A stretch of 64,000 nucleotides of DNA from the sequence record NC_061449.1; one strand, given 5' to 3'. Under the pieces are notes generated by a model. The model did no database searches, was not told the DNA's origin, and worked only from the letters and a program-made list of their open reading frames with translations. Positions 3,695-54,633 of the stretch are shown here, one piece after another. The position numbers and the translations under genes are program-made. The first letter of the stretch is position 1, and each line of letters opens with the position of its first letter.

Positions 3695-4516
3695 TTAATC
3701 ACCCACCGCAGTATACCAGAAGTCCCAGCCGGCAGTGTTTGTGCCAGTAGACTTGATGGTGAAACCACCTAACAAGGCGTTCTCATTCATCGCGCTCGTA
3801 CCATCCAGATTGTAGAGCTGGTAGGTCTTCGCTTGGTTGAGTGCAGCGTTCACGAAGGTAATCTGAATGCTGATACAACGGTTGATGAATGCCGTGTTGA
3901 ATACGACGTGAATAGTATCAGTAGTTGACGCGTTCACGACTCGACCCATGTTATGAGTAAAGCCAGTGTTCATATCGCGGTTACTACCAATCCACGCGTT
4001 AGGGATAACTGCACCGGTCACAGGGTTGAGTGCTTGTGATACACGATACTCGTCGATAGCTGCATCACGCCCAGGACTACCTGTAGGGCCAGTGGCACCT
4101 GTAGGGCCAACAGCACCCGTGTTACCAGTAGCGCCGACAGGTCCTGTATTACCAGTAGGTCCGTTACGACCGCGCGGGCCACGAGGACCCGGGCAGCCAT
4201 CTTCACCGTCACGACCATCACGTCCGTCAGCGCCAGGCAGACCACGCAGACCATCTTTACCCTGCTTACCTTCACGACCAGATTTAAGCTGGTCAGCAGT
4301 CGGAAGTCCTAAGACGCTAGACTGACTTCCATCAGGCCAGACGATAGTGAGAGTGCCTGTAGTTGTATCAAACTCAGCACCCTGAGAGCCGGGAATCTTT
4401 GCAGCCTCTGTTGGGTCTATGAACTCAACAGCGGACGCCGTCTTCTTACCTAACACCTTGCCGACGGGGTACGAGCCACCGTCGATAAGAGCAGGGCTAA
4501 TCTTCGTAAGAGACAT
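3695..4516 (-). CDS. collagen-like fibre protein with C-terminal gp53-like/H-lectin-like domain
   Basis: 273 aa; about 30 Gly-X-Y triplets; N-terminal FDTTTGTLTI..GLPT motif shared with three paralogues. Confidence 0.85.
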   Translation of the reverse strand: MSLTKISPALIDGGSYPVGKVLGKKTASAVEFIDPTEAAKIPGSQGAEFDTTTGTLTIVWPDGSQSSVLGLPTADQLKSGREGKQGKDGLRGLPGADGRDGRDGEDGCPGPRGPRGRNGPTGNTGPVGATGNTGAVGPTGATGPTGSPGRDAAIDEYRVSQALNPVTGAVIPNAWIGSNRDMNTGFTHNMGRVVNASTTDTIHVVFNTAFINRCISIQITFVNAALNQAKTYQLYNLDGTSAMNENALLGGFTIKSTGTNTAGWDFWYTAVGD

Positions 4517-4527
4517 GGGCTAAACTC

Positions 4528-4731
4528 CTAACCAGTCAGTGTTGTCCAATCAGGTTGTCCCGATTGTCCGGCTTCTGGGTTTTTGACTTTCGTGTTATTG
4601 ATTGTCATACGAACCCAACGCACACTTCCGTCTGCGTCTTGAAACCGAACCTTCGTTCCACCGTATGCTAAATTAGCTACCCACCTGTCTCTTGAAGGGT
4701 CTTTGAAAGCTAAACGTGCATATGCTGGCAT
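4528..4731 (-). CDS. small hypothetical fibre-cluster protein
   Basis: 67 aa, fills the gap exactly; loosely resembles the N-terminus of 7652..9673. Confidence 0.7.
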   Translation of the reverse strand: MPAYARLAFKDPSRDRWVANLAYGGTKVRFQDADGSVRWVRMTINNTKVKNPEAGQSGQPDWTTLTG

Positions 4732-4734
4732 CGC

Positions 4735-21739: not shown

Positions 21740-22746
21740 TGGTTTCAACTCTCTTTCTCTCTTTACCGCCTGGGTTGCGGTCGAACCGCACACAAGAGCG
21801 TCACATAAAAGGCACACGGCGGAAAAGTGAAAAGTTCCGTGCGTCTTAAATGCAACAGCTCCAGCGAAGGAGGTGGCCCATCGGTGATCTGCGGTGGTTG
21901 ATACACTCTTTAACAATCGCTCTTGTTGTGCATTAAATCGTGGTAGGAACGCGATTGACCGCTAACAAGTCCTATACGATATTTCACTACCCGGAAAAGT
22001 GGGCAAGCTATGGCAGCACGTCAACGGCAGCATGGCGCGGACACACTCCATTGAACATTGTTAAGGGCAATGCTCAACAGGCTGTGAACAGCTTTGACCA
22101 AACGTAGAGTCGCTCGTCGCCCAACATCACTTGAGTATCTCGTCTACGTTCTTTTACTCCCTGAATACCATACAAGGAATACGGCACCCATGAGGGTCTG
22201 CGGATGTTTATCACTCTCAGACTCTTGCAGTTCAATCCTGTACGCAGTGTGTTGAGTCGTCCGCTGGATGACACACTACATACCCTCACCGTGCTGTACA
22301 TCGGTAGGAAAGAGCTGGTGGAAAGTTGTCATGAAAAGACTGCTAGCTGGTAGGCTTGCCTCTCTTCCCAATGTACACTTGCGCCAGCTAATGTACATCA
22401 GGCAGCGTAGGCTGCAATACTGCTGTCCCTGAAAGATTGACCACAGCGTTGAGACTTCGCTCCATCAATCTACGTGCCTAGAGGCGGTTGCCGTGCGTAT
22501 GTCTGAAAAGAATGTAAAACACTGGGCCTTGTGGGCGTCAGCAGCAGAGCAACGGTCTATCACGTGGGTGCCGGGGTTATCCTCACGATTACAGAGCGTA
22601 AGCTCAAACCGGCTGGAGGCTCACATGCTGCCCAGAAATACAGCGCATGAGTTTGATGGATCAGCAAGATGCCACCCGCGAAGAAAGCATCTTACCGCAA
22701 CAGTTAGATATTACTATCTGCAATTTTTATTTACAGATTTTTTTTT
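21740..22746 (+). ncRNA. candidate large (~1 kb) structured non-coding RNA
   Basis: No credible ORF in an otherwise gene-dense genome; more than 10 nested helices of 6-13 bp; G.U pairs and a GNRA loop favour the plus strand; ends at a T9 run. Boundaries and strand are approximate. Confidence 0.6.
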
Positions 22747-24508
22747 AAAACGCTTTACGTTCAACATTTGAATATAAAGTTTCATACGGCTCAGAGTACA
22801 GTTCAGGACCGCGTTGAGCGCGTACAGTCACGTAACCAGTGTGACGGTTGAACGCAGTGATTTCGACTGTAGGCTGTTTAGGCTTGATGGTCGCATAAAT
22901 CGGAGCGTTAAGCGTAGGTTCGTCTGTCTGAATCTTATTTACAGATTGCAGCGCAGCACCAGACAGCGTTGGCAGCTTGAATCGCAGTTCAGCGCGTTTC
23001 TGGCCGAACGCAGCACGAATCATACCGTTTTCCAACTGCACACCGTTCTGCTTGAGATACGCAGCGATGCGACGACCGATACCGGTAAGTTGATCGCGAG
23101 TGCGAGGGTCGAACGTACCTTCGAAGCTGATTGCTTCTGTAGGTTGACGCACAGACAGGTGCAGACCAGTATTGAAGTAGCCTTCGGTCAGCAGACGCAG
23201 GATCTCTTTAACGACCTCTTTCGTGTTCTGATTGATAGCAGCAATGCGCAGTTCTGGCACGTCTACTTTCACAGGGTCACGCAGTTCGGTCTGATTGTCC
23301 ATGTAGCCGAGAGACACATGCTTCGCGTTGGTGTATGTATGCTGCAACACACCAGTAGCGCGAATCAACACAGAGCCGCTTTTAGCGAGGTCATACAGTT
23401 CATCGCTGGTGGTTGTGCTGAACAGGTAGTAGTCTGTAGGCACTGCCATGCGATTGACAGCTTCGACCGCTTTCGTCTGCACTTCTTTCACAGTCTTGCC
23501 GAAGACAACACGACTACGGTTCGGCTGAGATGCAGACACAGGGAAGAACGCACCGTAGACAGCCTGAACGTTCTTCTTAATAGGCTGCTCAGACTGAACC
23601 TTCTTGCCACCCGCCAGTGGAGGCAGCTTAACACCCACCAGCTTGCCTTTAACGATGTGCTTGTTCTCTTTGACAGGCTTGAGCGAGTCAACGAGTTTAG
23701 CCAGCGATGCACCATCAAGAATCTTCTCAAGCGGAACAACAAGGTTCTGCGGCAGATAGTGTTTCTTGCGATACGTGTAGATGACGGTATCTTTCTTGAT
23801 CTGCAAAGGCGTTGCCATGTTGCGGCCAACTACGCCTACAGGCTGGAACGTGTTTACTTTGTCGTCAGCAATTGCACCGAACTGCTTGGTGAACTCAGTC
23901 TGCCCAATGATGTTAGCAACACGCAGATGACCACGAACGATAAACACGATCTTCGGTTCGTCTTTCAAGCGCAGCTCGTAACGGTCACGGTTCAGATAAA
24001 CCATGCTGTACTTGTCGCCCTTCTCCAGTTCAAGGTCATACTCGTCGTTAGCATCATCGACAACGACTTTCTTACCCTGATAAGTAGAGTAGGTACGAGC
24101 ACCAGCAGACTCAGAGGCAATCTCCATTGCCTTGCCTGTGTTAGACAGTGACGCGGCAAAGTCACGCACGGCTGGCATCAGGTCGAATGAAGACGATACT
24201 GCGTATGGTTCGCGCTTGTCGCCGAGGTGCAGATGCACAGCACTTGTGCTGGACATGAAGACGCTAGTACCTACATCTTCGTGCTTACCTGCAAAGTTCA
24301 TGCCACTAATACGTTCGATGACATTTGCATTCAGTGATTCGAAGCGAACATCGCTACCAGCAGCGAAGTCAAAGATTTCACCGTGACGCCAAGCATAGGC
24401 CACGTTGTTCGAACTAAGTCCGACAAACGCATCACCAATCTGACTGACGGTTAACGGCATGATACTCAGATCACGAATGATCGAGGACTGCTTTTTAATG
24501 AGGTTCAT
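22745..24508 (-). CDS. hypothetical protein, probable head-internal protein
   Basis: 587 aa; S-x-S-A motifs (MSSTSA, IASESA) followed by the shared Y-x-x-Y-x-G domain. Confidence 0.8.
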   Translation of the reverse strand: MNLIKKQSSIIRDLSIMPLTVSQIGDAFVGLSSNNVAYAWRHGEIFDFAAGSDVRFESLNANVIERISGMNFAGKHEDVGTSVFMSSTSAVHLHLGDKREPYAVSSSFDLMPAVRDFAASLSNTGKAMEIASESAGARTYSTYQGKKVVVDDANDEYDLELEKGDKYSMVYLNRDRYELRLKDEPKIVFIVRGHLRVANIIGQTEFTKQFGAIADDKVNTFQPVGVVGRNMATPLQIKKDTVIYTYRKKHYLPQNLVVPLEKILDGASLAKLVDSLKPVKENKHIVKGKLVGVKLPPLAGGKKVQSEQPIKKNVQAVYGAFFPVSASQPNRSRVVFGKTVKEVQTKAVEAVNRMAVPTDYYLFSTTTSDELYDLAKSGSVLIRATGVLQHTYTNAKHVSLGYMDNQTELRDPVKVDVPELRIAAINQNTKEVVKEILRLLTEGYFNTGLHLSVRQPTEAISFEGTFDPRTRDQLTGIGRRIAAYLKQNGVQLENGMIRAAFGQKRAELRFKLPTLSGAALQSVNKIQTDEPTLNAPIYATIKPKQPTVEITAFNRHTGYVTVRAQRGPELYSEPYETLYSNVERKAF

Positions 24509-25571: not shown

Positions 25572-26063
25572 TTAGGCAAATCGCCCACCACGCCATGCGG
25601 CCTTAATGAGCAATTTTGCCACGATTTCGTTCTTCATTGTCTTTCGCTTGGCATTGCTTCTGACAAATGCAGAGCCGAACTTATTCACGACAAGCAGACC
25701 ACAACCGAGTTTTTTGATACGCTCGATAATGCGCTCACCGTGAGAATCAAACAGTTGTTCATCAATGATGAAGTACATACGCATACAGTAAGGCAAATAC
25801 TTATGCCACTTCTTATCAGTATTGAAGTCAGCCCAGCAGCTTTTCACCTCAGTGATAATCATATCGCATTTGGTGTTTAGGCAGAACACGTCAGCCCTTA
25901 AGTTACCGTGCTTAATCAAACCGAGTTCAACGTGACACGAATAGCGTTTGTCAATCCAGTAGCGTTGTGCAGCTTCGGTGAGAAATGCCGTCTTATCAGG
26001 GCGGCTCATTGATTTAAAAACAGCAGTCTGAATAGGTTCAGCTTTGCGCCGCTTATAGGCCAT
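25572..26063 (-). CDS. MmcB-family PD-(D/E)xK nuclease / DNA repair protein
   Basis: E-L-G-L...RADV...ITEVKSCWADFNTDKKWHKYLPYC..MYF. Confidence 0.85.
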   Translation of the reverse strand: MAYKRRKAEPIQTAVFKSMSRPDKTAFLTEAAQRYWIDKRYSCHVELGLIKHGNLRADVFCLNTKCDMIITEVKSCWADFNTDKKWHKYLPYCMRMYFIIDEQLFDSHGERIIERIKKLGCGLLVVNKFGSAFVRSNAKRKTMKNEIVAKLLIKAAWRGGRFA

Positions 26064-26511
26064 ACGAGTCGATAATGTCCAGGGCTTGCTCTACGATAGG
26101 ACGAAGTTTCTTGTCCACTTTACGCAGAGCCTTATCTGCTTTGAACCATTTGCGCTCACGCGTCAGGGCTTCATCGTATTCAGTCAGCATCGTTTTGACT
26201 TTCATGATGAACCATTCAACGTGTTGCTCACGGCCGGTTTTGCCTTTAACGTAACGCATGATATCTACGAAGTCTTTCGGCTTACCGAGAACACCAGCTT
26301 CTTCCATTGCTTCTTTGAGAGCACTGTCAAGGGGCGTCATTCCTTTTTCGACTCCGCCTTTAGGCAGACCCCAATTGCCAGCGTGGGTGGTACGAATCAA
26401 AAGCAACTCGACTGTACCATCCTTTTTCTTTCTGTATGGAATGACGCCTGACTGCTTACGAGGTTTCTTCTCGTGTGGCAGTTTGGCAGACAATGATACG
26501 TTGATCATCAT
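26053..26511 (-). CDS. NUDIX hydrolase (Ap4A/DIPP-like subfamily)
   Basis: SGVIPYR...WGLPKGGVEKGMTPLDSALKEAMEEAGV Nudix box; RERKWF. Confidence 0.93.
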   Translation of the reverse strand: MMINVSLSAKLPHEKKPRKQSGVIPYRKKKDGTVELLLIRTTHAGNWGLPKGGVEKGMTPLDSALKEAMEEAGVLGKPKDFVDIMRYVKGKTGREQHVEWFIMKVKTMLTEYDEALTRERKWFKADKALRKVDKKLRPIVEQALDIIDSYGL

Positions 26512-27008
26512 AACGAGTCGAGTCCCCGTGGCAGGTCAACATCCCATGAACCAGCATTGTCTTTCCACAGACCTTGATCCTGCAACTCTTTATAGGCTTC
26601 ATAAAGAGACACGCGGGCCTGAGGCGAAAGCTCGTTCACAAATCCAGGCATGTTGTATGAATACGAACAGCCAGGGAAGTATTGTAGACGGCAGGACTCG
26701 TATGTGTCAAACACAATACGACCTTCTGCGTCAGTCACAACAGAATGTGAAGCCATACCACCTTGACCGAGAACAACAATCTCATAGTCAGGATGTTTGT
26801 TGTAGACACGTTGAATAAACTCGGCTGCTTCTGCAAACGGTCTGGCTACTTGCGCAGCTCGATGGCAGTTCTGCTCCACGGCCGATTCAGCGAGAGCGCG
26901 AGCGCCAGTCAAATTCATAGCCGAGGCAAAGATAAGAGTTGTGAGCGCTTTTGGCTCAACAGCAGTGGGGAAAAACTTTGTGCCCCACGCTTGAGATAAC
27001 GAAAGCAT
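26508..27008 (-). CDS. hypothetical protein
   Basis: 166 aa; AGGAG RBS; GCTAATTT upstream; N-terminal MLSLSQA. Confidence 0.8.
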   Translation of the reverse strand: MLSLSQAWGTKFFPTAVEPKALTTLIFASAMNLTGARALAESAVEQNCHRAAQVARPFAEAAEFIQRVYNKHPDYEIVVLGQGGMASHSVVTDAEGRIVFDTYESCRLQYFPGCSYSYNMPGFVNELSPQARVSLYEAYKELQDQGLWKDNAGSWDVDLPRGLDSL

Positions 27009-36488: not shown

Positions 36489-37001
36489 TCACATCATTGG
36501 ACGGGAAACATCAAGAGCCATCTGCACAGACCACATAGCTCGACCACCGGTACCGTTAAGCGTAATGCTTTGACCACCGATAGGCCAGCAGTTGCGTAGC
36601 TGTTGTTCGCCAACCATTTGCCCTTGGTTGTCGTATAGCTCAATGATAAGGTTTTTCTTATACACGGACGGCAGTCTAAAACCACCAGTGTATGGGTTCT
36701 GAATCAAGTTCTGCCACGCAGTGAAATACTTCATCACCGCGAGCTTCTGGTCGATGCCAAACAGCAATGCGAATCCGTCAACGCTCGAACCATGAGGCCA
36801 GTTGATAGTAACCGTAGCCACTTCTTTTGATTTCGATTGATAGACGGAGAATGGCAGGTCAACTTCTTCACACGCAAACGGGCTTAACGATACATTACCA
36901 ATTACAGGAAAATCTCGCACACGCCACTTGTCTTGCATGAAGGGGTCGTCAAGGCCAGGAGCAGAAGAATCATTCAGATCGTCAAGCGTCGGCAGCGGCA
37001 T
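36489..37001 (-). CDS. tail tube protein paralogue (T4 gp19-like)
   Basis: 170 aa; YFTAWQNLI.NP......YKKNLIIELYD..G.......NCWP. Confidence 0.8.
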   Translation of the reverse strand: MPLPTLDDLNDSSAPGLDDPFMQDKWRVRDFPVIGNVSLSPFACEEVDLPFSVYQSKSKEVATVTINWPHGSSVDGFALLFGIDQKLAVMKYFTAWQNLIQNPYTGGFRLPSVYKKNLIIELYDNQGQMVGEQQLRNCWPIGGQSITLNGTGGRAMWSVQMALDVSRPMM

Positions 37002-37003
37002 GA

Positions 37004-37678
37004 TTAGTCCTCTACAATAACAAGCACCGGTCTAACTGCATCGTCGAACTTGAGGAACGTAGCACCAACCAGATAGCCACCATTCTCTACTTGTTTCACA
37101 ACGGCTTTCTCGTAGTCCGTTTCCCACTTCTCACGTTGATTAGGCTTGTAGCCTTCAAACGTTTCTGACGCGTCGTAGTAGTTATACGTGCCACCAGTTG
37201 GCATTGGGATTCGAGCAAGGAACTCAATACGACCAGCGTTCTTAAACTTGGCCTTACGTAGTTCTTGAGTCAGCTTAGTGTTCTCAGCTTTAGAGCCAGG
37301 AACAGCTTTGAATGGTTTCTTCGGTTGTGGTTCTTTAGGCGCAGCAGGAAGTTTCTCACGCGCTGGAGTGTTCTTGTCACTCGCTTTCTTAATGCGAATG
37401 CCGGACACTGTACCAGTGAACGGGCGACTACGGCCAAGCAACGAACGTGCTGTAGCGGCATCGACTTCAAACACTACTGACGGGTCATCCTTATGCAGCA
37501 CATAGAACTTGTTGCGCTTTGCTGCCAAGATACCGAATACATCTTTTTCCTCGATATCGGCCTCATGCTCCTTGTTCTCAATGCTTACCTTGCGCTTACC
37601 TTCGAAGCGATACCAGTCGCAGTCTTGAATCCCTACGATAGGTGTCTTACGTGCGCTTTCGCTCAGTAGAATAAGCAT
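37004..37678 (-). CDS. hypothetical protein, probable head-internal protein
   Basis: 224 aa; N-terminal LLSESA then the shared W-Y-R-F-E-G domain. Confidence 0.8.
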   Translation of the reverse strand: MLILLSESARKTPIVGIQDCDWYRFEGKRKVSIENKEHEADIEEKDVFGILAAKRNKFYVLHKDDPSVVFEVDAATARSLLGRSRPFTGTVSGIRIKKASDKNTPAREKLPAAPKEPQPKKPFKAVPGSKAENTKLTQELRKAKFKNAGRIEFLARIPMPTGGTYNYYDASETFEGYKPNQREKWETDYEKAVVKQVENGGYLVGATFLKFDDAVRPVLVIVED

Positions 37679-37693
37679 AGTCTCTCCAAAACG

Positions 37694-37722
37694 AAAAAGG
37701 GCCAGAACGAATCTTGGCCCTT
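37694..37722 (-). terminator. intrinsic terminator after the tube gene
   Basis: GGGCCAAGA-TTCG-TTCTGGCCC followed by TTTTT. Confidence 0.85.
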
Positions 37723-37729
37723 GTGTTTC

Positions 37730-38242
37730 TTACGATGCGAGTTCGGCGTAGTCGAAGGACCATTCGATTGATACCGGAACAGCCTGCGCAGCACCAGAGA
37801 ACTGCAAATCAGGAACCTGCTTCGGCCACACACCGTAGATGTTGTACTCAGCAACTACAGAACCGTCCATATCGAAGATACGGAAGATTGCTTTGGTCGC
37901 GTAGTCAGCTTTACGTGCGCCCAGCTGGGTTTGAGTAGCACGAACGAACTCATGCCATTCTTCCAGTTGTTTGTACACCGCCATTTCAGAGTTTTCGTTG
38001 TACTCTGTGGACAGCGCGTGAGAGAAGATCTTACGACCAGCGTAGTTGAGCTGGTGGCCGAACGCTTCTTTCAGAACTTCTTCCAGAGTAGAACCTGGCT
38101 TAACACCGGTCTTACAGAACAGGCGCAGAGTACGCGCGTAATCCGTACCACCGACAGGCGGGTTAGGAATCAGGAACTCGAAGTTGTCATCGAGTAACGG
38201 ATCTTTCGTAGACGCAAATTCGTCAAGAGTTACCTTTGGCAT
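37730..38242 (-). CDS. major tail tube protein (T4 gp19-like)
   Basis: 170 aa; directly after the sheath; LEEWHEF...DY...IFDMDG..V.EYNIYGVWP..V.DLQF. Confidence 0.88.
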   Translation of the reverse strand: MPKVTLDEFASTKDPLLDDNFEFLIPNPPVGGTDYARTLRLFCKTGVKPGSTLEEVLKEAFGHQLNYAGRKIFSHALSTEYNENSEMAVYKQLEEWHEFVRATQTQLGARKADYATKAIFRIFDMDGSVVAEYNIYGVWPKQVPDLQFSGAAQAVPVSIEWSFDYAELAS

Positions 38243-41524: not shown

Positions 41525-42622
41525 TTAGCCACGGACGGCTTTCGCCACGGAACGCACGTTCGCCAGAGTGAAGGAGAAGGTGCTAGACAGCAACCAACCG
41601 CGGTCGGTGTTGCCCTGGTTCGCGCCGGAAGTCGGGGTAGACTGGGTGCCGCCACGAGTGGTGTACACTGCGTGGTAGTCCTGGTCGGCCAGAACATACA
41701 GTTCGCCGTCCTGCAGAACGCGGTGCTCTGGAGCGCGGAAGCCGTCAGTTACCAGTTCCAGACCCAGCAGAGTACCCAGACGACCAGTAGTGATCAGGTC
41801 GTATTTGCTTACCGGGTCCAGAGCAGAGGAGAACTGATCGTTACCAACGATATCGTTCCAGTAGTCCTGCGCCATCACAGCGGTGCTGACAGGCAGCGGC
41901 CATGAAGACACAGAATTTTTCAGAGTGGACAGCAGACGCGGAGTCAGGTCGCCGTGTACCCAGGTGATAGGGTTAGCGATGCCAACAGCCTGATCACAAG
42001 CGCGTTTCCACAGACGGTCTTCTGCAACCATGATAGAAGACAGGCCGTCTTGCTGTGCGCGATCCAGCAGGTCGCCGTTGATCTGATCCAGATCCATTTT
42101 GCTAACGCGGATGTTGGATTTCAGTTCGAACTCAGCAGGCGTGAACACACGACCGCGGAACTGACGGTAACCGTAGTCGGTAGGACCGGTTGCCATGATC
42201 GCTTCTGCCTGGTGGATTTTCAGTTCGATACGAGCGATATCGCCCTGACGAACAGTAGCGCCTTTACACACTTTGCGCAGCAGGCCAGCACGTTCAGCAC
42301 GGTCTTCGATAGATGCAACGATGGATGCACCCAGAGAAGCCCACTTCTCACCGCTGCTATCAGCAACAGCTTCCTGGAACAGCTCGATCTTCTCAGCTTC
42401 TGTCAGCGGGTTCGAAGCAGAGGTAGAGTGAACCAGTTCGCCGGTCTGGAAGCTGTTCATCAGCTTGCTGATTTGACCCAGCAGATCTTTTTGCGAGTAG
42501 GCGTTGATTTCGCCGGTGCTTTCGCTCAGTGCCAGATCACCTTTCCCGCCAAAACGCAGGTCTTCGATAGGTGCACCAGTACGCAGAGTTACTTTAGCGC
42601 CGCGCATTAAGGAATTGTTCAT
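41525..42622 (-). CDS. major capsid protein (HK97 fold)
   Basis: 365 aa; very strong codon bias; follows the scaffold and decoration genes; FELKSNIRVSKMDL..I.GDLL, G.LGTLLGLELVTD pattern. Confidence 0.85.
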   Translation of the reverse strand: MNNSLMRGAKVTLRTGAPIEDLRFGGKGDLALSESTGEINAYSQKDLLGQISKLMNSFQTGELVHSTSASNPLTEAEKIELFQEAVADSSGEKWASLGASIVASIEDRAERAGLLRKVCKGATVRQGDIARIELKIHQAEAIMATGPTDYGYRQFRGRVFTPAEFELKSNIRVSKMDLDQINGDLLDRAQQDGLSSIMVAEDRLWKRACDQAVGIANPITWVHGDLTPRLLSTLKNSVSSWPLPVSTAVMAQDYWNDIVGNDQFSSALDPVSKYDLITTGRLGTLLGLELVTDGFRAPEHRVLQDGELYVLADQDYHAVYTTRGGTQSTPTSGANQGNTDRGWLLSSTFSFTLANVRSVAKAVRG

Positions 42623-42681: not shown

Positions 42682-43389
42682 TTAGGCGCCGTAAGAGGAA
42701 GACATTTCGACGATCAGGTAACCACGTTCAGTGGTAGGTGCCTGTTTGATCACGCAGCCTTTCAGCACAGTACCGGTTCCGCCGATAGTCAGCATACCGT
42801 TCGGGCCGAGAGTTGGGTGAATCACGTTGTCAGCAGACCAGTCAGCAGTCGGGTCAAACATAGAGGTAGCGATGTTACCCAGTTTGATGTAGCCACAACG
42901 GCCTTCAACGTTAGAAGCCAGACCACCGATAGGAGCATCAGCAGTGTAAGAACGCGCTTCGGTCACAGACAGTTCGTAAGCATACTGGATGCGAACTTTC
43001 TTGCCCTGGTCGTCAGCGTGGAAGTACAGGTCAGCACCCTGAACACCAACAGCACCAGCTTCGGAAGGAGCTGCGTTAGCTTCCTGATCCGCTTTAACGC
43101 CGTCGATTTTAACCAGCAGTGCGCCAGCGTCAGGAACGCGGGAAGCAGTGAATTTTTTGGTCGCGTCGATAACGAACTCTTCAACACGGTTCATGTGCGC
43201 AGGCGGCATAGAGCGAGCCAGAGCGAAACCGGCGAATACTTCGTTAGCAGCACCAGTAGACAGACGCAGGAAAGAGTGACCGCCTTCGCGAGCCCAAACC
43301 AGTGCGACGCCTTCTTCGTGGATTACTTCGCCCGGCAGCAGGTCAGCTTCCTGGGTCTGTACGATATCGGTAGCGTTTTGAAACAACAT
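42682..43389 (-). CDS. head decoration / cement protein
   Basis: Start moved to ATG 43389 (GGAG RBS); strong codon bias; directly upstream of the MCP. Confidence 0.6.
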   Translation of the reverse strand: MLFQNATDIVQTQEADLLPGEVIHEEGVALVWAREGGHSFLRLSTGAANEVFAGFALARSMPPAHMNRVEEFVIDATKKFTASRVPDAGALLVKIDGVKADQEANAAPSEAGAVGVQGADLYFHADDQGKKVRIQYAYELSVTEARSYTADAPIGGLASNVEGRCGYIKLGNIATSMFDPTADWSADNVIHPTLGPNGMLTIGGTGTVLKGCVIKQAPTTERGYLIVEMSSSYGA

Positions 43390-43441: not shown

Positions 43442-45472
43442 TTACATGCGGCGCAGGCGAGCAAGTTTATCTTCATACGAGGAGCCAGTGGAAGCTGAAC
43501 TCTGGGATTCAACAGTGTCGTTACCCTGAGTAAGCAGTTCAGCAGCGGATGCCGGAGCTTTAGGCTGCGCGGTTACAACCTGCTGTTGAACGACCGATGC
43601 GCGTTCAGCACTCACGGTGCCGGCGGCTGCGTCGATTGACTCAGAGATTTCGTTCTGGGCGACTTCGGACTTGCTCATGAGGTCCATCGCTTTTGACAGC
43701 GAAGTAGTCAGGAAGTCTTTGCCGTGTGCAATAAACGCACGTTCAACCAGAGCGCGAGGCTCTTTGATACCAGCAGCAGACAGTGAGCTGCACAGGCTAT
43801 CGACGATTGGGTTGCGTACATCGCCCCAGAAGTTTTTCGTAACACCCAGCTGGGATGCAGACAGGGCAGCGATGAAGCGTTCAGTATAAGCTGAGGTTGC
43901 TTCTTCGATAGTGCCGGTAACGTTCGCGGTAGCTTCGCTAACACGCGCGTCAGACTGCGCAGCCAGAAGTTTTTCGACAGGCATTTCGATCTGATACGGC
44001 ATAAAGCCGAATGCTTCACAAGTACCAGTCACACCAGTCTGATTCAGAGAGTGTGATACTGCACGAATGAAATTATCAGTTGCGAAGGATTTCACCGCAT
44101 TTTCTTCGCCAACTGCATTAGATACAGAAGCGAGAGTAGCGCGAGCAATCGGATGACCGTCGTAATACATGTGAACGGTTTCCAGCTTGCCAGTTGCGCG
44201 GCTCAGAGCTACCAGAGCAGGGTCCAGTGTGCCGTGTTGAGCTTGCGCGGTAGACAGGCTGTCGAAGGTGCGAGAGACAACGCCGCTTTCAGAATCAATG
44301 TCGTCCTCGTCATCGAGGTCGAGATCGTCTTCTTCCAGATCTTCTTCGTCGTCGAACTCGTCGTCTTCGTCAGAGCTGGATTCAGAGTCGATATCCTCTT
44401 CATCGTCCAGGTCTTCTTCGTCGAGGTCTTCTTCGTCGAGATCTTCTTCGTCGTCCTCGTCAGAGCTGGATTCAGAATCGAAGTCTTCGTCTTCTTCGAG
44501 GTCTTCATCATCTTCCAGATCTTCGTCGTCAATGTCGTCCAGATCGTCTTCATCCAGATCTTCATCGTCGAGGTCGTCTTCGTCGTCGATATCATCGTCT
44601 TCATCATTAGATGATTCAGAATCGAAGTCTTCGTCGTCCGAATCATCTTCGTCGTCGAGGTCGTCTTCTTCAATGATATCAATGTCGCTATCGTCGTCGC
44701 CGGACTGAGATTCAATCGGCTCGTCGACCAGAGCGGCAGAACAGTGCGCACAGAACACAGGCTCTTCGTCAGAGCTTACAGTGAATGGCTGTTCGCAGTT
44801 AGCGGAGCAGCTATAGATGTGCGCTTCGACTTCACCGTCAGCAGAGGACAGCGCGGCCAGAGCTTCTGGAGCTTCCTGCGCTTCGCAATTCTCTACAGCT
44901 TGACCGGTGTACGGGTCGAAGTTTACGGCAGTAGCAGCGTTAAAGCTACCAGTACCAGACAGCGCAGTGAACGCGTGTGCGTTGCTCAGTGCCAGAGCGA
45001 AGTTGCGTTTAGCAGCTTCGGCAGTTTCACCAGTAGCAACCAGACCAGCGTGTTCAATTTGTTCGTCAGCAGAAGCGGACTCGGCCAGGAATTGAGTTAC
45101 GCGGTCGTCAGTGATTTCTGACAGGTCAGCAGAGCACGATGGGCAGCAGCCCTGAACCAGTGCAGCAGAGTCAGAGATAACGTGGCTACCACAACCATCA
45201 AGACAGATGGTGTAATGAGCTTTCACGTCACCGGCAGCAGACTGCGACTGGACTTCGGCGCGCTCAACCAAATCAGGATGCTCTTCCAGCAGTTCTTCAC
45301 CGCCTTTCGGATTGTAGAGGTCTGTGCCACTCTGCGAAGCAAAGCCTACACCATCAGAGGACCCGAAAATCATCAGGTTCTGACCGAGTGCAGTGCGGCG
45401 AAAGTTCTCTACTGCCTGATTATGGTTTTGACCGACACACAGGATACCCGCGAGTTGGGTAATCTTTGGCAT
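43442..45472 (-). CDS. prohead core / scaffold protein with two Zn-ribbon-like modules and an acidic linker
   Basis: Start ATG 45472 (GAGG RBS); Cys4 modules; ~145-aa D/E tract; ten S-x-S motifs; C-terminal LARLRRM. Confidence 0.7.
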   Translation of the reverse strand: MPKITQLAGILCVGQNHNQAVENFRRTALGQNLMIFGSSDGVGFASQSGTDLYNPKGGEELLEEHPDLVERAEVQSQSAAGDVKAHYTICLDGCGSHVISDSAALVQGCCPSCSADLSEITDDRVTQFLAESASADEQIEHAGLVATGETAEAAKRNFALALSNAHAFTALSGTGSFNAATAVNFDPYTGQAVENCEAQEAPEALAALSSADGEVEAHIYSCSANCEQPFTVSSDEEPVFCAHCSAALVDEPIESQSGDDDSDIDIIEEDDLDDEDDSDDEDFDSESSNDEDDDIDDEDDLDDEDLDEDDLDDIDDEDLEDDEDLEEDEDFDSESSSDEDDEEDLDEEDLDEEDLDDEEDIDSESSSDEDDEFDDEEDLEEDDLDLDDEDDIDSESGVVSRTFDSLSTAQAQHGTLDPALVALSRATGKLETVHMYYDGHPIARATLASVSNAVGEENAVKSFATDNFIRAVSHSLNQTGVTGTCEAFGFMPYQIEMPVEKLLAAQSDARVSEATANVTGTIEEATSAYTERFIAALSASQLGVTKNFWGDVRNPIVDSLCSSLSAAGIKEPRALVERAFIAHGKDFLTTSLSKAMDLMSKSEVAQNEISESIDAAAGTVSAERASVVQQQVVTAQPKAPASAAELLTQGNDTVESQSSASTGSSYEDKLARLRRM
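44270..44705 (-). repeat. low-complexity D/E tract with four imperfect DSES units
   Basis: Repeated GAC/GAT/GAA codons; F/I-DSES-S/G recurs four times. Confidence 0.9.
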
Positions 45473-45550: not shown

Positions 45551-46684
45551 TTAAATTTTTCTGCTATCAATGTCAGTTTGTGGAATATATCTGTTTTCGA
45601 AGTATTTCGCTACTACCTCGACGCCGTTTAGCGTATAAACGTTGCGTAAGCTATATCCCCAAACCATCAGTTCAGCAAGCGTTGCGAAGTGCTCTGCGGG
45701 TACTGATTTAATGGTCAACGCGTTCATAGAATCCGGGTGGATTTTCTTGCCGCGAATGGCCTGATCAAACTTCATGCGTTCTACGTTACGTAGCATCGTA
45801 TGGTCCACAAAGTGGGCTAATTCATGCGTAATAACGTGCGCCATACTCAGGCTATTATAGCCGCCGAGTAGCTGCACTAACTGTGCAGGATGGATTGATA
45901 TCGCACCGTACAGGAAACCGTGTACGCGGTATGTTGCAATGTGACTACCACCACTATCCGAGTTAGCTTTCAGCAGGCCAACATACAGACGTTTGAATGG
46001 TAGTTCAAAGTTCAGGCCGATGCCGGGCATAACGTTTTCCTGAATATCTTTAAGTACATAGTCAGGAGGGCTAATACCGTTCTTCTCAAGCGTGACACCA
46101 GGAACACGCAAGTCATCCATGCCCAATATTTCGAGATGCACACGACCACACTTAGGAACAGGCTTGACAGCGTAGTTATTGGGCGTACCACCAGGATATA
46201 TTGCTGGTGCGTACTGCAATGGTTTGAAATTACCAAAATCAGGCATATCCATTAGACGACGCTGTGCAGCTTTCATCGAGTCAGGAGTGTCTTCGCCTGG
46301 GCGATCGTCATTCCCCGTTGCCAATGGCTTAGGTTTAGACTCAGGCTCTGGTGATTTCTCAAGTTTAACAGGCTTTGGTTCTGGTGCTGGTGGCGCAGGC
46401 TTCTTCTGCTTCTCCTCGTAAGGAGTGAAGTCGAAGTCCGGCTTAAAGAGAGCGTCAGGTTTCGCAGTGAATGGGCGACTGTTCTGAACGAGCTTGTCAC
46501 CGTCTTCTCCACTGATTGCATATGCCTGATCGTATTTAGGATGGGCAATGTAGTACAGGTCATCGCTTACTTTGAGAAGGCCAATGACCTCACGCGATTC
46601 CATATGGACACCGTTTGAGATCATTGCCGCCTGACCCAGATAGCGATAGTACGTGTAGTCCCCTATAGCTAAACCTTCTGGCAT
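45551..46684 (-). CDS. HExxH zinc metallopeptidase-like protein
   Basis: Start ATG 46684 (TGATG overlap, AAGGA RBS); VITHELAHFVDH...EHFA; Pro/Lys-rich linker; N-terminal shared domain. Confidence 0.75.
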   Translation of the reverse strand: MPEGLAIGDYTYYRYLGQAAMISNGVHMESREVIGLLKVSDDLYYIAHPKYDQAYAISGEDGDKLVQNSRPFTAKPDALFKPDFDFTPYEEKQKKPAPPAPEPKPVKLEKSPEPESKPKPLATGNDDRPGEDTPDSMKAAQRRLMDMPDFGNFKPLQYAPAIYPGGTPNNYAVKPVPKCGRVHLEILGMDDLRVPGVTLEKNGISPPDYVLKDIQENVMPGIGLNFELPFKRLYVGLLKANSDSGGSHIATYRVHGFLYGAISIHPAQLVQLLGGYNSLSMAHVITHELAHFVDHTMLRNVERMKFDQAIRGKKIHPDSMNALTIKSVPAEHFATLAELMVWGYSLRNVYTLNGVEVVAKYFENRYIPQTDIDSRKI

Positions 46685-47463
46685 CAGGCCATCCTTAATA
46701 GATGTTCTTTGTACGTTGCAGCACACGCGAACGCTGGGTCATCCACGCTACTACATTCGAAGCCGGTAAGCATCTTACAGTCACGATACACCAGACGGCC
46801 TGTACGCGCATCGAGATAGGTCGGTTTGTTGAACGCTGTGTGCGAACAGAAGTTACGCATCTTAGGCGTTACCAACTGACCGCAGATACTGCACTTATAA
46901 GCACGATACGTTGTGCCTTTGCTGTACGTGTTCAACTCACCACTCAGGATTCGGTCGCAGCGCTCTTTACAACGCGTACGGTCGAATGCCAGCAGCAACG
47001 TCAGACGAGCGTGGTCGCCACGGAAGTTCTTGAGCTTGGACAGGTTGCTGTCGAAGATCATACCCATGGCCTGACGGTAGTCTTTATTGTTGTGCTCGAT
47101 GAACGTCGGCTTACCAATGAACGTCTGATAAGCAAGACGACCTTGGTCAGGGTTGAACGTTAACCACTCTTGCAGACTAAACGCATCACCGTTAGTGTTC
47201 GGCAGCTCAGTGATGTTCACCGGAACAGGAACGATGATATAGTCGCGGATATCGCGTGACGTGTTATACTGCTCGGCTGCTTTCGGCAACCACACGTTCA
47301 CATCAAGGTTAAAGGAGCCTGTCTGAATACCGAAGCGAGAAGCATCCACACGAATAGATTTAGCTGTACGGCTAACATCTTCCTTGTGCATGTCAATCGC
47401 GTTCAATCCGACGAGGCCCATGTCTGACGTATCAAACGATTCAGACTTTACTGACTGGGTCAT
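46684..47463 (-). CDS. prohead (capsid maturation) serine protease-like protein
   Basis: Start ATG 47463 (GGAG RBS); PNTNGDAF, GKPTFIEH, YSKG..CSICG pattern; synteny protease-scaffold-MCP. Confidence 0.7.
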   Translation of the reverse strand: MTQSVKSESFDTSDMGLVGLNAIDMHKEDVSRTAKSIRVDASRFGIQTGSFNLDVNVWLPKAAEQYNTSRDIRDYIIVPVPVNITELPNTNGDAFSLQEWLTFNPDQGRLAYQTFIGKPTFIEHNNKDYRQAMGMIFDSNLSKLKNFRGDHARLTLLLAFDRTRCKERCDRILSGELNTYSKGTTYRAYKCSICGQLVTPKMRNFCSHTAFNKPTYLDARTGRLVYRDCKMLTGFECSSVDDPAFACAATYKEHLLRMA

Positions 47464-52803: not shown

Positions 52804-54633
52804 TTAACTGGCGATAGGGTCTTTGTTGACGGGGAAGTCTTCGGTCATATCGAGCACACGATTGAACAGCTTAGGTGCCATGTCTTTCACATGTTCTGCA
52901 TAATCGAAGAGATTCTGCTTACGCGCACGGTTCACACGAACCTGACGTACCTCATCAGGGCTGTTGGTAATGTCGTACAGCGTATAGATGACGATGTTAT
53001 CTGAGGTCGAGTGCGTACTGACTCGGACGATAACCCAATCACGATTGAGCTTCGCATCTGCCTTGAATCTAAGCACGTCACCTTCTTCTGCTTCCTCGGC
53101 GCGATGCTGAGGAGTAGATTTGTTGGCGGCTGCAATCTTCTTAGCAGTCTCTTTCGCTTCCTGCTCTGCGGCAGCAACGTCTGAGTCCGTGTCTTCGTCA
53201 GCTTCGGTTTCGTCTACAGCGTCAGAGGTGTCAGCGGATTCATCTTCCTCTGATTCCTCGTCTTCTCCATCTTCACCTTCGCTATCAGCTCCTTCGTCGT
53301 CAGCGGCGTCATCATCCACAGATTCATCGTCTGCGTCTGAATCGGTGTCCCCATCATCTGCATCATCAACATCTGTATCACTATCGTCAGTGTCTTCTTC
53401 TGCATCAGGGTCTTCCTCTTCTTCGACAGGCTCAGCGGCTTTCTTACCGGCCTTAGCACGAACTTTCTTAGGAGGCACGTCTTCTTCGTCCTCTTCTGGT
53501 TCGTCAATGTCTGACAGGTCCAGAGCAGGTTCATCAATGTCTTGCGAATCATCTCCGCCAAACAGAGAACCTATAGAGTCTTCAATGTTGAACGCATCGC
53601 CAGCGAACGGACTACGCGCAAGAATATCTTCGAGCTTCTGCTCGTCGAGGTCCGCGTCGATTTCGACTTCTTCGATTTCATCATCCAAGACTTCTTCCTC
53701 GATTACGCGAATACGCTTGCCGCGCCTGTCAACACCGTCTTCGTAGACAGTACGCACTTCGGGCTTATCGATCTCGATTTCACCAGAGCGCACTTTCTTA
53801 CGCAGCGAACTAAGCTCAGACTCGCGCTCTCGCTTCTTCCTGTTCGCTTCTTTCTGTAGCTCTTTGCGTTGCTGCTTTTGCTCAAGGATCTTCGCATTGT
53901 TTGCGAGTCGTTGGGCTTCCTGTTCTTCTTCGGCAGAACGTCGACGGGCGCGTCGTACTATGCGGCGATAGGCTTTAACGTCATCAGCAGTCAGAACACC
54001 TTTAGGCCAATCGTTGAACGGCAGGATGTTGGTATCATGCACGACCAAGTCGTATTGAGCGTCATCGACTTTAAGGAACATTCCCTCGGAGTTAATGATG
54101 ATACCGCCTTTGCCTTGCCGCAAGAAGCGCACACCAATCATGTCGTTCTTATACAGCTTGGTCATACCCTTAGAAGTCTTCACAGGGTATTCAGGGCTTG
54201 CAACCATACGCCACTGATAGTTGTCGAAGTTAACTCCGTACACAGATTCAGATGGGACACGACGAGGCGAGAATCGTGCGGCATCGAACTGACTGCGGTT
54301 GAGTTGACGCTCCATCGTTTTGGCACCAGCAGTCTTAGTACGCCCAGAGACCTCACGATTAACAACGTCAGGTACTTTGCGCAACTTCGATGCACGTTCC
54401 ATCAGGAACAGTCCAGTAGACTTATCAAGAGGGAAGTCAACATGCGGCATATCAGGGAAAATCAGAGTGTAGCGTCCGCCATTACGCAGCGGGAGAATAC
54501 CGAAGATATCACCTTCACGAATCATGCGTTTATGAGTTCGCTGGGATACTTCTTTTCCGCGTGAACCTGTATACTTCATCCACGCGTACTTCGATACGGC
54601 ATCTTGATAGGATGCAGATACGGAAAGTACCAT
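52804..54633 (-). CDS. acidic virion/head-internal protein with two copies of the shared domain
   Basis: MVLSVSAS start; coiled coil; long D/E tract; alternative GTG start at 54660. Confidence 0.75.
   Translation of the reverse strand: MVLSVSASYQDAVSKYAWMKYTGSRGKEVSQRTHKRMIREGDIFGILPLRNGGRYTLIFPDMPHVDFPLDKSTGLFLMERASKLRKVPDVVNREVSGRTKTAGAKTMERQLNRSQFDAARFSPRRVPSESVYGVNFDNYQWRMVASPEYPVKTSKGMTKLYKNDMIGVRFLRQGKGGIIINSEGMFLKVDDAQYDLVVHDTNILPFNDWPKGVLTADDVKAYRRIVRRARRRSAEEEQEAQRLANNAKILEQKQQRKELQKEANRKKRERESELSSLRKKVRSGEIEIDKPEVRTVYEDGVDRRGKRIRVIEEEVLDDEIEEVEIDADLDEQKLEDILARSPFAGDAFNIEDSIGSLFGGDDSQDIDEPALDLSDIDEPEEDEEDVPPKKVRAKAGKKAAEPVEEEEDPDAEEDTDDSDTDVDDADDGDTDSDADDESVDDDAADDEGADSEGEDGEDEESEEDESADTSDAVDETEADEDTDSDVAAAEQEAKETAKKIAAANKSTPQHRAEEAEEGDVLRFKADAKLNRDWVIVRVSTHSTSDNIVIYTLYDITNSPDEVRQVRVNRARKQNLFDYAEHVKDMAPKLFNRVLDMTEDFPVNKDPIAS

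What the first reader, a model, noticed from the sequence alone, without database searches (positions are those of the whole stretch)
37410..37678. An unrecognised ~70-aa domain shared by four otherwise unrelated proteins, usually right after an S-x-S site
SEEN: W/Y-x-x-Y/F-x-G-K...I/L-x-x-x-D-x-F-G-I...Y-x-L-x-x-x-D-x-P-x-V-x-F-x-V-D occurs in 37004 (WYRFEGKRK...IEEKDVFGI...YVLHKDDPSVVFEVD...RSRPFT), 52804 (WMKYTGSRG...IREGDIFGI...YTLIFPDMPHVDFPLD, plus a weaker second copy), 22745 (YSTYQGKK...LEKGDKYSM...YELRLKDEPKIVFIV, from about 24094) and the metallopeptidase 45551 (YYRYLGQ...SREVIGL...YYIAHP...NSRPFT). In three of the four it starts a few residues after an S-x-S-A motif. INFERENCE: an SH3-like docking module that addresses different cargo (peptidase, acidic protein, unknowns) into the head or onto a common partner. 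Together with the S-x-S code it would be a modular packaging/injection system.
Basis: partly seen in the sequence, partly recalled or inferred. Interest (0 to 1): 0.72.

Follow-up and report, generated by a model that had tools for sequence, protein, structure and literature searches.

The report
KMPT-N: catalogued SH3-like jumbo-phage domain
The shared ~70-residue segment is real, but it is the Pfam domain KMPT-N of a jumbo-phage lineage, already catalogued though of unknown function; it is predicted to be an SH3-like barrel and nearly always follows a short flexible Ser-x-Ser-Ala leader that looks like a head-maturation cleavage signal.

Summary
The window is Erwinia phage pEa_SNUABM_17 (Alexandravirus), bases 62001-126000. 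All four proteins match Pfam PF20294, KMPT-N ("KTSC and Metallopeptidase N-terminal fusion domain"), at E 1e-18 to 1e-28. UniRef already names their close relatives this way, so the domain is not unrecognised. The weak second copy in gp147 is real (profile-profile E 2e-10). The genome holds no other copy.

The family is rare: 76 clusters among 1.84 billion proteins, all jumbo-phage-like. Most fall into four conserved classes, which are the four window genes. AlphaFold2 (pLDDT 85) gives six strands plus a helix. The best solved-structure matches are nearly all SH3 domains, but weakly (E at least 0.017).

The S-x-S-A observation holds across the family. 58 of 80 domains have it 5-17 residues upstream, against a 3.5% background, including internal domains. 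The leader is predicted flexible.

Leader and domain are separable. The leader also heads a NUDIX hydrolase and a giant helicase-like protein. S-x-S also sits at a conserved site near residue 66 of the capsid protein, in this clade only. The peptidase class has the domain without the leader.

Best reading (confidence about 0.4): a retained SH3-like docking module on head-associated accessory proteins, preceded by a protease cleavage site. No proteomic evidence was found.

The parts
37004..37678 (-). gp131, 224 aa: leader, KMPT-N domain, Lys/Pro-rich linker and a conserved ~100-aa C-terminal domain of unknown family. It lies between two tail-tube paralogues.
37427..37621 (-). KMPT-N domain of gp131 (residues 20-84). 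Predicted six strands plus a helix, SH3-like.
   Evidence: Pfam E 7e-21; AlphaFold2 pLDDT 84.9; Foldseek
37652..37663 (-). S-E-S-A leader motif of gp131 (residues 6-9), in a stretch predicted to be flexible.
52804..54633 (-). gp147, 609 aa: leader, two KMPT-N copies, a basic coiled region, a long acidic tract and a C-terminal domain.
54394..54588 (-). KMPT-N copy 1 of gp147.
   Evidence: Pfam E 5e-18
54019..54231 (-). KMPT-N copy 2 of gp147, divergent, with a 'NYQWR' motif and no S-x-S leader.
   Evidence: hhalign Prob 96.8%, E 2e-10; same strand order in the AlphaFold2 model
54613..54624 (-). S-V-S-A leader motif of gp147 (residues 4-7).
22745..24508 (-). gp114, 587 aa: a ~130-aa N-terminal region, then S-E-S-A, an internal KMPT-N domain and a ~380-aa C-terminal part.
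23906..24091 (-). KMPT-N domain of gp114 (residues 140-201).
   Evidence: Pfam E 2e-18
24104..24115 (-). S-E-S-A motif of gp114 (residues 132-135), lying inside the protein just ahead of the domain.
45551..46684 (-). gp140, 377 aa: KMPT-N at the very N-terminus with no leader, a Pro/Lys-rich linker and a zincin-type peptidase with HExxH at 45812-45826.
46478..46657 (-). KMPT-N domain of gp140.
   Evidence: Pfam E 2e-28
46684..47463 (-). gp141, head maturation protease and candidate enzyme for the S-x-S sites. Its own N-terminus carries a conserved S-E-S-F-D at 47434-47445.
   Evidence: phrog_18299 E 1.5e-126; alignment
41525..42622 (-). gp137, major capsid protein, with S-x-S sites at residues 33-36 (42515-42526) and 66-69 (42416-42427).
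43442..45472 (-). gp139, an acidic scaffold-like protein with six S-x-S-A sites and repeated 'DSESS' units.
26053..26511 (-). gp118, NUDIX hydrolase that carries the leader (MMINVSLSAK) but no KMPT-N domain.

Best explanation
The segment is the KMPT-N domain (Pfam PF20294). It is a small SH3-like beta-barrel with a C-terminal helix, used by one jumbo-phage lineage as a portable protein-binding adaptor.

In this phage it sits on four conserved late-gene products: a zincin peptidase, a tandem-domain acidic protein and two proteins of unknown function. I propose that it docks these accessory proteins onto a common partner inside the assembling head, either the scaffold or core or the inner shell.

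I propose that the short flexible leader ahead of it, hydrophobic-S-x-S followed by Ala, is a maturation cleavage site for the prohead protease gp141. Cleavage would leave the domain at the new N-terminus of the mature protein.

What is shown:
- family membership;
- the fold class (weakly);
- family-wide conservation and predicted flexibility of the leader;
- enrichment of the motif and its conservation at fixed positions in head proteins.

What is inferred:
- that cleavage occurs;
- the identity of the protease;
- location in the head;
- the binding partner.
For: Membership and fold:
- Pfam hits at 65-99 bits.
- AlphaFold2 pLDDT 84.9; six strands plus a helix. Leader residues 1-16 have low confidence, so they are not part of the fold.
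- Top solved-structure matches are SH3 domains.

Leader:
- Present ahead of 58 of 80 domains, including 13 of 16 internal ones, against a 3.5% background.
- Ser codons come from both codon families, so the constraint is on the protein.

S-x-S in the proteome and in head proteins:
- S-x-S-A occurs 61 times in the genome against 32.8 +/- 5.2 expected, and 21 against about 9 in the window.
- The capsid protein has S-x-S at residues 66-68 in all five phages compared from the enterobacterial (Erwinia/Dickeya/Yersinia) clade, but not in HRDY3, PaBG or RSL1.
- A cut at residue 68 would remove 19% of the protein. PaBG's capsid protein loses about 20% on maturation (PMC7412058).
- The protease N-terminus has a conserved S-E-S-F-D in the same clade only.
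- Scaffold-like gp139 has six sites plus 'DSESS' repeats, mostly conserved in JA11 at 50% identity.

Leader on other proteins:
- The same leader heads NUDIX gp118, and the NUDIX of a distant metagenomic relative, where its first six residues (MFISIS) are the same as those of the neighbouring KMPT-N-SprT gene.
- It also heads the 1950-aa helicase-like gp174 in three phages whose N-terminal regions are 36-45% identical.
- A 221-kDa 'RuvB helicase-like' protein is a virion band in PaBG.

Context:
- gp140 lies between the protease gene and the scaffold-like and capsid genes.
- In another contig a KMPT-N-KTSC gene lies between genes I take to be terminase and portal from their sizes and order. They are not annotated as such.
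Against: - No proteomic data place any KMPT-N protein in a virion. The 14 abundant PaBG virion bands do not include its KMPT-N protein gp217.
- gp131 lies in the tail module, between two tube paralogues.
- Leader and domain occur independently, so the domain need not be the address.
- Unlike the T4 targeting peptide, the domain would stay on the mature protein.
- The S-x-S cleavage specificity is unproven. It differs from the Glu-at-P1 sites of T4, phiKZ and SPN3US proteases.
- Foldseek E-values against solved SH3 domains are weak (at least 0.017).
Confidence: 0.4

Rival explanations
1. KMPT-N is a nucleic-acid-binding small barrel, as many SH3-like, Tudor or KOW-type barrels are. It would tether its partners to phage DNA or RNA, in the cell or in the capsid, rather than to a protein.
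For: - The domain is basic on average: mean net charge +5, and 78% of copies have pI above 9.
- Several Lys/Arg positions are conserved.
- Some members are fused to KTSC, a domain described as RNA-binding (PMC7824862).
- SprT-type peptidase partners act on DNA-protein crosslinks in cells (my own knowledge).
Against: - The gp140 and gp114 copies are acidic (net -4 and -1).
- The best fold matches are peptide-binding SH3 domains.
- No known nucleic-acid-binding family was matched.
Confidence: 0.2
2. KMPT-N is a homotypic recruitment domain. The peptidase class (gp140 or the SprT fusions) would use its own leaderless copy to bind the copies on the other family members, and would then cut their S-x-S-A leaders, which are held at a short distance from the domain.
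For: - The peptidase class alone lacks the leader, in all four orthologues examined.
- The other three classes carry it 5-17 residues upstream of the conserved Trp, mostly 6 or 9-13.
- KMPT-N peptidases occur together with non-enzyme KMPT-N proteins in the loci examined.
- Tandem copies exist in one chain.
Against: - The leader is also found on proteins without the domain: NUDIX, helicase-like, capsid protein and the protease itself.
- Distant relatives have peptidase and KTSC members without any leader.
- The tandem model gives no confident contact between the two domains (pTM 0.49).
Confidence: 0.15
3. The proteins are tail- or baseplate-associated cargo, for example carried in the tube lumen as Hcp-bound effectors are in type VI secretion, and KMPT-N binds tube or spike proteins.
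For: - gp131 and its orthologues always lie between two tail-tube paralogues.
- Metagenomic members lie near gp5/VgrG-type spike genes.
- One family representative has a T4 gp19 tube-domain hit.
Against: - The shared S-x-S leader links the family to head proteins and the head protease.
- gp140 lies in the head module.
- The single tube hit could come from two adjacent genes called as one.
Confidence: 0.1

Closest known systems
Pfam PF20294, KMPT-N (KTSC and Metallopeptidase N-terminal fusion domain)
   Same: All four window proteins score two to three times the curated cut-off over the full 66-position model. Fusions to SprT-type metallopeptidase and to KTSC were recovered among relatives. UniRef uses this name for their close relatives.
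   Different: I found no paper that uses the name, so no function is attached to the family. The model starts after the S-x-S-A leader. I found no published description of the leader, the tandem copy or the SH3-like fold, but I could not read the Pfam entry text.
T4 capsid targeting sequence and internal proteins (IPI-III, Alt), cut by the prohead protease gp21
   Same: Both have a short N-terminal leader on otherwise unrelated proteins that ends in a conserved short motif. The motif is shared with the capsid protein's propeptide boundary and with scaffold proteins (PMC5694885).
   Different: The T4 leader is 10-20 residues long, ends in Glu and is itself the address. Here the leader can be as short as six residues and the motif is S-x-S before Ala. 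In this family a folded 70-residue domain follows and would be retained. Neither cleavage nor packaging is shown.
phiKZ / SPN3US head and ejection proteins with propeptides (cleavage motif S/A/G-x-E)
   Same: These are jumbo phages with many head proteins processed at a short motif. They show paralogous proteins with near-identical N-termini and multiple sites in core proteins (PMC5694885).
   Different: This is a different phage lineage. It groups with PaBG, Lu11 and RSL1 by capsid protein similarity. The motif has no Glu at P1. The propeptides there are mostly longer than 100 residues, and no shared folded domain has been described.
SH3 and bacterial SH3b domains
   Same: The predicted strand topology and size agree. 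The top Foldseek matches are the Pex13, Src-family, Eps8 and OSTF1 SH3 domains and the SH3b domains of NlpC/P60 enzymes. The tandem model matches tandem-SH3 proteins.
   Different: There is no sequence similarity, and E-values are at least 0.017. The domain has an extra C-terminal helix and strand. The SH3 ligand-binding residues were not examined.
MuF-domain polymorphic toxins of temperate phages (own knowledge; not checked here)
   Same: A constant N-terminal phage-particle domain is joined to variable C-terminal enzymatic domains.
   Different: KMPT-N partners fall mostly into four conserved orthologous classes rather than a fast-changing set. There is no homology to MuF.

Membership tests
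Pfam PF20294 KMPT-N | Score above the curated gathering threshold (28.9 bits) over most of the 66-position model | tested here: met
   74.6, 65.3, 66.8 and 98.6 bits, covering model positions 1-66, 1-65, 3-64 and 1-66
Pfam PF20294 KMPT-N | Fusion to a metallopeptidase or a KTSC domain, as the family name states | tested here: met
   gp140 has HExxH. Relatives P0025, P0044 and P0063 form the class I equate with the three SprT-like hits, and P0051 has KTSC. gp131, gp147 and gp114 carry other partners. The gp131 C-terminus gave no KTSC hit.
SH3-like small beta-barrel fold | Five or six antiparallel strands forming a barrel of about 60 residues that superposes on solved SH3 domains | tested here: inconclusive
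   The model has pLDDT 84.9. Nearly all of the top 50 PDB matches are SH3 or SH3-like, with TM by target 0.5-0.6 and probability up to 1.0. The best E is 0.017 and none is at or below 0.001.
SH3-like small beta-barrel fold | Binding of a proline-rich or other linear peptide in the aromatic groove | not testable with these tools
   No complex prediction or binding assay is available here. Pro/Lys-rich linkers do follow the domain in gp131 and gp140.
T4-type capsid targeting / internal head proteins | An N-terminal leader removed by the prohead protease at a motif shared with the capsid protein | not testable with these tools
   Only sequence evidence exists: the leader and the capsid-protein site share S-x-S. 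No N-terminal sequencing or semi-tryptic peptide data were found.
T4-type capsid targeting / internal head proteins | The protein is present inside the prohead or virion | not testable with these tools
   The only related virion proteome found, PaBG with 14 Coomassie bands, does not list its KMPT-N protein gp217.
T4 / phiKZ-type prohead protease cleavage code | Glu at P1 (L/I-x-E or S/A/G-x-E) | tested here: not met
   The conserved motif is S-x-S followed by A, S or T, with no Glu at the inferred P1 position. The PaBG leaders look like h-x-E-A instead.
Polymorphic-toxin-type delivery domain | Highly variable C-terminal domains among close relatives | tested here: not met
   About 55 of the 76 representatives fall into four conserved architecture classes.

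The most novel reading that the evidence does not exclude
The enterobacterial (Erwinia/Dickeya/Yersinia) branch of this jumbo-phage lineage may have replaced the usual Glu-at-P1 head-maturation code with an S-x-S code. It may use that code, together with a retained SH3-like docking domain, as a two-part system for loading enzymes into the capsid for co-injection. The cargo would include a zincin peptidase, a NUDIX hydrolase, a giant helicase-like protein and, in relatives, a Tad6-like Thoeris inhibitor. The leader would give access and processing, and KMPT-N would give anchorage to a common internal partner.
Probability: 0.25. Interest if true: 0.75.

Novelty: already known. Interest (0 to 1): 0.35.

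Why it matters
As stated, the finding is not new. The domain has a Pfam accession, and UniProt already labels close relatives of these proteins with it.

Three things seen here could not be found in the literature I was able to search:
- The domain is almost always preceded by a flexible h-S-x-S-A leader.
- The same motif marks the capsid protein, the protease, a scaffold-like protein and several enzymes, in one clade only.
- The fold is SH3-like.

If the leader is the cleavage and entry signal and KMPT-N the anchor, this lineage would offer a simple, testable code for what gets packed into a jumbo-phage head. It would also offer a handle for loading foreign proteins, as the T4 targeting peptide does.

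Tried and rejected
- **Small HMMs for the second copy.** An HMM of the four window segments, and one of 76 domains, did not detect the second gp147 copy directly (domain E 8 to 210). A profile-profile comparison of orthologous regions settled it.
- **Literature.** No paper contains 'KMPT-N'. The jumbo-phage survey mentions KTSC and zincins but not this domain. No virion proteome was found for Alexandra-, Y3- or JA11-type phages, and the Y3 paper is not held.
- **gp131 C-terminus as KTSC.** Rejected: no hit in any of 22 class members.
- **gp114 N-terminus as Tad6.** Profile comparison gives 4.5% probability, E 0.009, so it is not established. Synteny with Tad6-bearing relatives is suggestive only.
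- **gp140 peptidase against the SprT class.** No significant similarity. Pfam gives only a weak M57 hit.
- **Sequence search of PDB.** Nothing for the domain profile, for gp141 or for gp140. NCBIfam also gave nothing.
- **'PaBG lacks the family'.** I first thought so from synteny. This was wrong: Foldseek and HMM searches find PaBG gp217 and an unannotated ORF of about 80 codons.
- **PaBG virion protein gp83 as the gp140 orthologue.** Rejected: it has no HExxH and no similarity.
- **Leader as a nucleotide-level signal.** Rejected, because Ser codons of both families are used and the motif also occurs inside proteins.

Full report
**Source and layout.** The window is identical to Erwinia phage pEa_SNUABM_17 (NC_061449.1, genus Alexandravirus, 263,916 bp), record positions 62001-126000. 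All genes of interest are on the minus strand, in the late and structural region. The four ORFs are gp131 (37004-37678), gp147 (52804-54633), gp114 (22745-24508) and gp140 (45551-46684). The annotated ATG starts give N-termini that match the orthologues.

**Is the shared segment real?** Yes.
- The curated Pfam model PF20294, KMPT-N, hits all four proteins at E 7e-21, 5e-18, 2e-18 and 2e-28. The cut-off is 28.9 bits and the scores are 65-99.
- Pairwise BLAST of the segments is only moderately significant.
- In leave-one-out HMMs the omitted protein ranks fourth of 692 ORFs each time.
- With the domain masked, the four proteins share nothing.
- A family HMM run over all six frames of the whole genome finds only these four genes.

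**The second copy in gp147.** It is too diverged to score on its own. The same region in 21 orthologues is strongly conserved around 'NYQWR ... GD.FG ... GG'. As a profile it matches the family at 96.8% probability, E 2e-10, over 68 columns. AlphaFold2 on gp147 residues 1-215 (pLDDT 85.2) gives both halves the same order of six strands, a helix and a strand. They are joined by a low-confidence linker, with no confident mutual orientation (pTM 0.49).

**Is it unrecognised?** No. Besides the Pfam hit, UniRef names close relatives (90% clusters) of all four proteins 'KTSC and Metallopeptidase-like N-terminal fusion domain-containing protein'. No paper in the searchable library uses the name, and no function is attached to it.

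**Distribution.** A profile of the four segments, scored against 1.84 billion representative proteins, finds 76 clusters at E up to 0.001. Three of them are low-complexity false positives. The domain is usually at the N-terminus.

With the domain masked, the representatives (together with the four window proteins) fall into these classes:

| Class | Members in the cluster |
|---|---|
| gp147-like | 24 |
| gp131-like | 19 |
| gp114-like | 6 |
| N-terminal Pfam Tad6 domain | 6 |
| SprT-like peptidase fusions | 3 |
| Unnamed (P0030, P0033, P0049) | 3 |
| gp140-like | 2 |
| Singletons, including KMPT-N plus KTSC (P0051) | about 15 |

The four window genes are thus the four main conserved classes of the family, not a fast-changing cargo set. 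Among isolated phages, gp131-type and gp140-type genes occur in 59 records each, with the same breakdown by host genus (Erwinia, Dickeya, Yersinia, Salmonella, phage NCTB). Structure and HMM searches also find members in PaBG and, probably, Lu11.

**Fold.** AlphaFold2 on gp131 residues 1-95 with a 78-sequence alignment gives pLDDT 84.9 and pTM 0.71. Strands lie at 21-25, 31-34, 39-42, 47-52, 57-62 and 69-73, a helix at 74-82 and a short strand at 84-86. Residues 1-16, which hold the leader, have low confidence.

Against solved structures, nearly all of the best 50 matches are SH3 domains (Pex13, OSTF1, Eps8, Src family), bacterial SH3b domains or Tudor-like barrels. TM by target length is 0.5-0.6, the best E is 0.017, and none is at or below 0.001. 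The tandem model matches tandem-SH3 proteins, again weakly. Against predicted viral structures, the ten significant matches that carry a name are all members of this family. A profile search of PDB sequences finds nothing.

**The S-x-S-A motif.** This part of the observation turned out to be the most informative.
- 58 of 80 domains have S-x-S-[ASTVK] within 22 residues upstream (46 have strict S-x-S-A). The second Ser lies 5-17 residues before the conserved Trp.
- This holds for 45 of 64 N-terminal domains, typically M-L-L-S-L-S-A, and for 13 of 16 internal ones.
- The background rate in the same proteins is 3.5%.
- Most exceptions carry A-x-A-type variants.
- Ser codons of both families are used, so the constraint is on the protein.

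**The leader and the domain are separable.**
- The gp140 class lacks the leader in all four orthologues examined.
- Distant metagenomic relatives have KMPT-N proteins without it.
- The leader also occurs without the domain. It heads NUDIX gp118 (conserved in Y3).
- In a distant metagenomic contig the NUDIX begins with the same six residues as the neighbouring KMPT-N-SprT gene.
- It also heads gp119, gp172, gp192-194 and the 1950-aa helicase-like gp174. On gp174 it is kept in JA11 and pEa_SNUABM_5, whose N-terminal regions are 36-45% identical to the window's.

**Link to head maturation.**
- S-x-S-A is over-represented: 61 observed against 32.8 +/- 5.2 in the genome, and 21 against about 9 in the window.
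- The capsid protein has L-S-x-S-T at residues 32-36. This is conserved in the five clade phages and in PaBG, and only partly in HRDY3 (L-S-S-A-T).
- It also has S-x-S at residues 66-68. The five phages of the enterobacterial clade that were aligned all keep it. HRDY3, PaBG and RSL1 do not.
- A cut at residue 68 would remove 19% of the protein, and the PaBG capsid protein loses about 20% on maturation (PMC7412058).
- The protease gp141 (phrog 'head maturation protease') has a conserved S-E-S-F-D near its N-terminus in the same clade only.
- gp139 lies between a 235-aa virion structural protein (42682-43389) and gp140. It is an acidic, scaffold-like protein with six S-x-S-A sites and repeated 'DSESS' units, mostly conserved in JA11 at 50% identity.
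- In T4, phiKZ and SPN3US, a short motif shared by capsid protein, core proteins and internal proteins is the mark of prohead-protease processing (PMC5694885).
- I therefore read S-x-S followed by a small residue as the candidate cleavage motif of this clade. This is an inference, because no N-terminal or semi-tryptic data exist.

**What the domain does.** The most economical reading is a retained docking module on accessory proteins that enter the prohead and are trimmed at the leader. Four things support it: the fold class, which is typically a peptide or protein binder; the constant position just after a processing-type leader; the flexible Lys/Pro-rich linker to varied C-terminal domains; and the position of gp140 in the head module.

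Several points count against it.
- No KMPT-N protein is among the 14 abundant PaBG virion proteins.
- gp131 sits between two tube paralogues in every relative examined.
- The family is mostly basic and is sometimes fused to KTSC, which fits nucleic-acid binding.
- The leaderless peptidase class suggests an alternative in which the domain recruits substrates to the peptidase.

I give the head-docking model about 0.4, nucleic-acid binding 0.2, homotypic substrate recruitment 0.15 and tail association 0.1.

**Verdict.** The domain is already catalogued, so the headline claim of an unrecognised domain fails. The SH3-like guess is supported at fold level. The packaging idea is plausible but untested, and leader and domain are two separable elements rather than one. 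The clade-specific S-x-S code is the part most worth a proteomics experiment.

Noticed in passing
whole genome of pEa_SNUABM_17; in the window e.g. 26485-26496 (gp118), 26988-27008 (gp119), 42416-42427 and 42515-42526 (capsid protein), 47434-47445 (protease): S-x-S-A occurs about twice as often as per-protein shuffles predict. It forms N-terminal leaders on proteins without KMPT-N: NUDIX gp118, gp119, gp172, helicase-like gp174 and gp192-194. It looks like a clade-specific maturation or targeting code.
   Followed up: partly
window 43442-45472 (gp139, annotated 'ATPase'): No ATPase domain was found. The protein has paired CxxC motifs near the N-terminus and a very long Asp/Glu tract with repeated 'FDSESS' units. 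It also has a conserved C-terminal domain shared with PaBG gp82 and RSL1 ORF134. It looks like a scaffold or core protein cut into small acidic pieces.
   Followed up: partly
window 22745-24508 (gp114); loci L011 2945-4678 and L012 10001-12760: In metagenomic relatives, one gene at the same place after thymidylate kinase (L011) and a related gene in L012 carry a Pfam Tad6 (type I Thoeris inhibitor) domain ahead of S-x-S-A and KMPT-N. The gp114 N-terminus resembles it only faintly (hhalign E 0.009, 4.5% probability). gp114 also has two further conserved S-x-S sites, near residues 58 and 87.
   Followed up: partly
window 36489-38242: gp131 lies between two tail-tube paralogues, gp132 and gp130 (both hit phrog_45). 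The arrangement is kept in JA11, Y3, pEa_SNUABM_5 and fHe-Yen9-02. In PaBG and HRDY3 the two tube genes are adjacent with nothing between them.
   Followed up: partly
locus L003 (PaBG) 3756-4190 and 4203-5165; L023 13160-14350: PaBG has an unannotated KMPT-N-like ORF of about 80 codons just upstream of the virion protein gp83. The two share an 'IKINLxEA' N-terminus. PaBG gp217 has tandem KMPT-N copies and begins M-L-M-I-A-E-A-K. PaBG leaders therefore look like h-x-E-A rather than S-x-S-A. That would fit a change of the P1 residue from Glu to Ser in the enterobacterial clade.
   Followed up: partly
window 46684-47463 (gp141): The head protease has a Cys-rich, zinc-ribbon-like stretch (C-S-I-C-G ... 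C-x-H) after the 'TYSKG' motif. It is conserved in relatives from JA11 to RSL1.
   Followed up: no
window 45812-45826 (gp140): The zincin motif H-E-L-A-H-F-V-D-H is present. One relative is annotated 'peptidase family M34', but Pfam gives only a weak M57 hit here and PDB gives nothing. The gene is intact.
   Followed up: partly
window 37004-37378 (C-terminal half of gp131): A conserved domain of about 100 residues ('EDK.LT ... GE.Y.YYDA') is shared by 19 representative clusters and matches no Pfam family.
   Followed up: partly
Orthologue N-termini support the ATG starts.
   Followed up: yes
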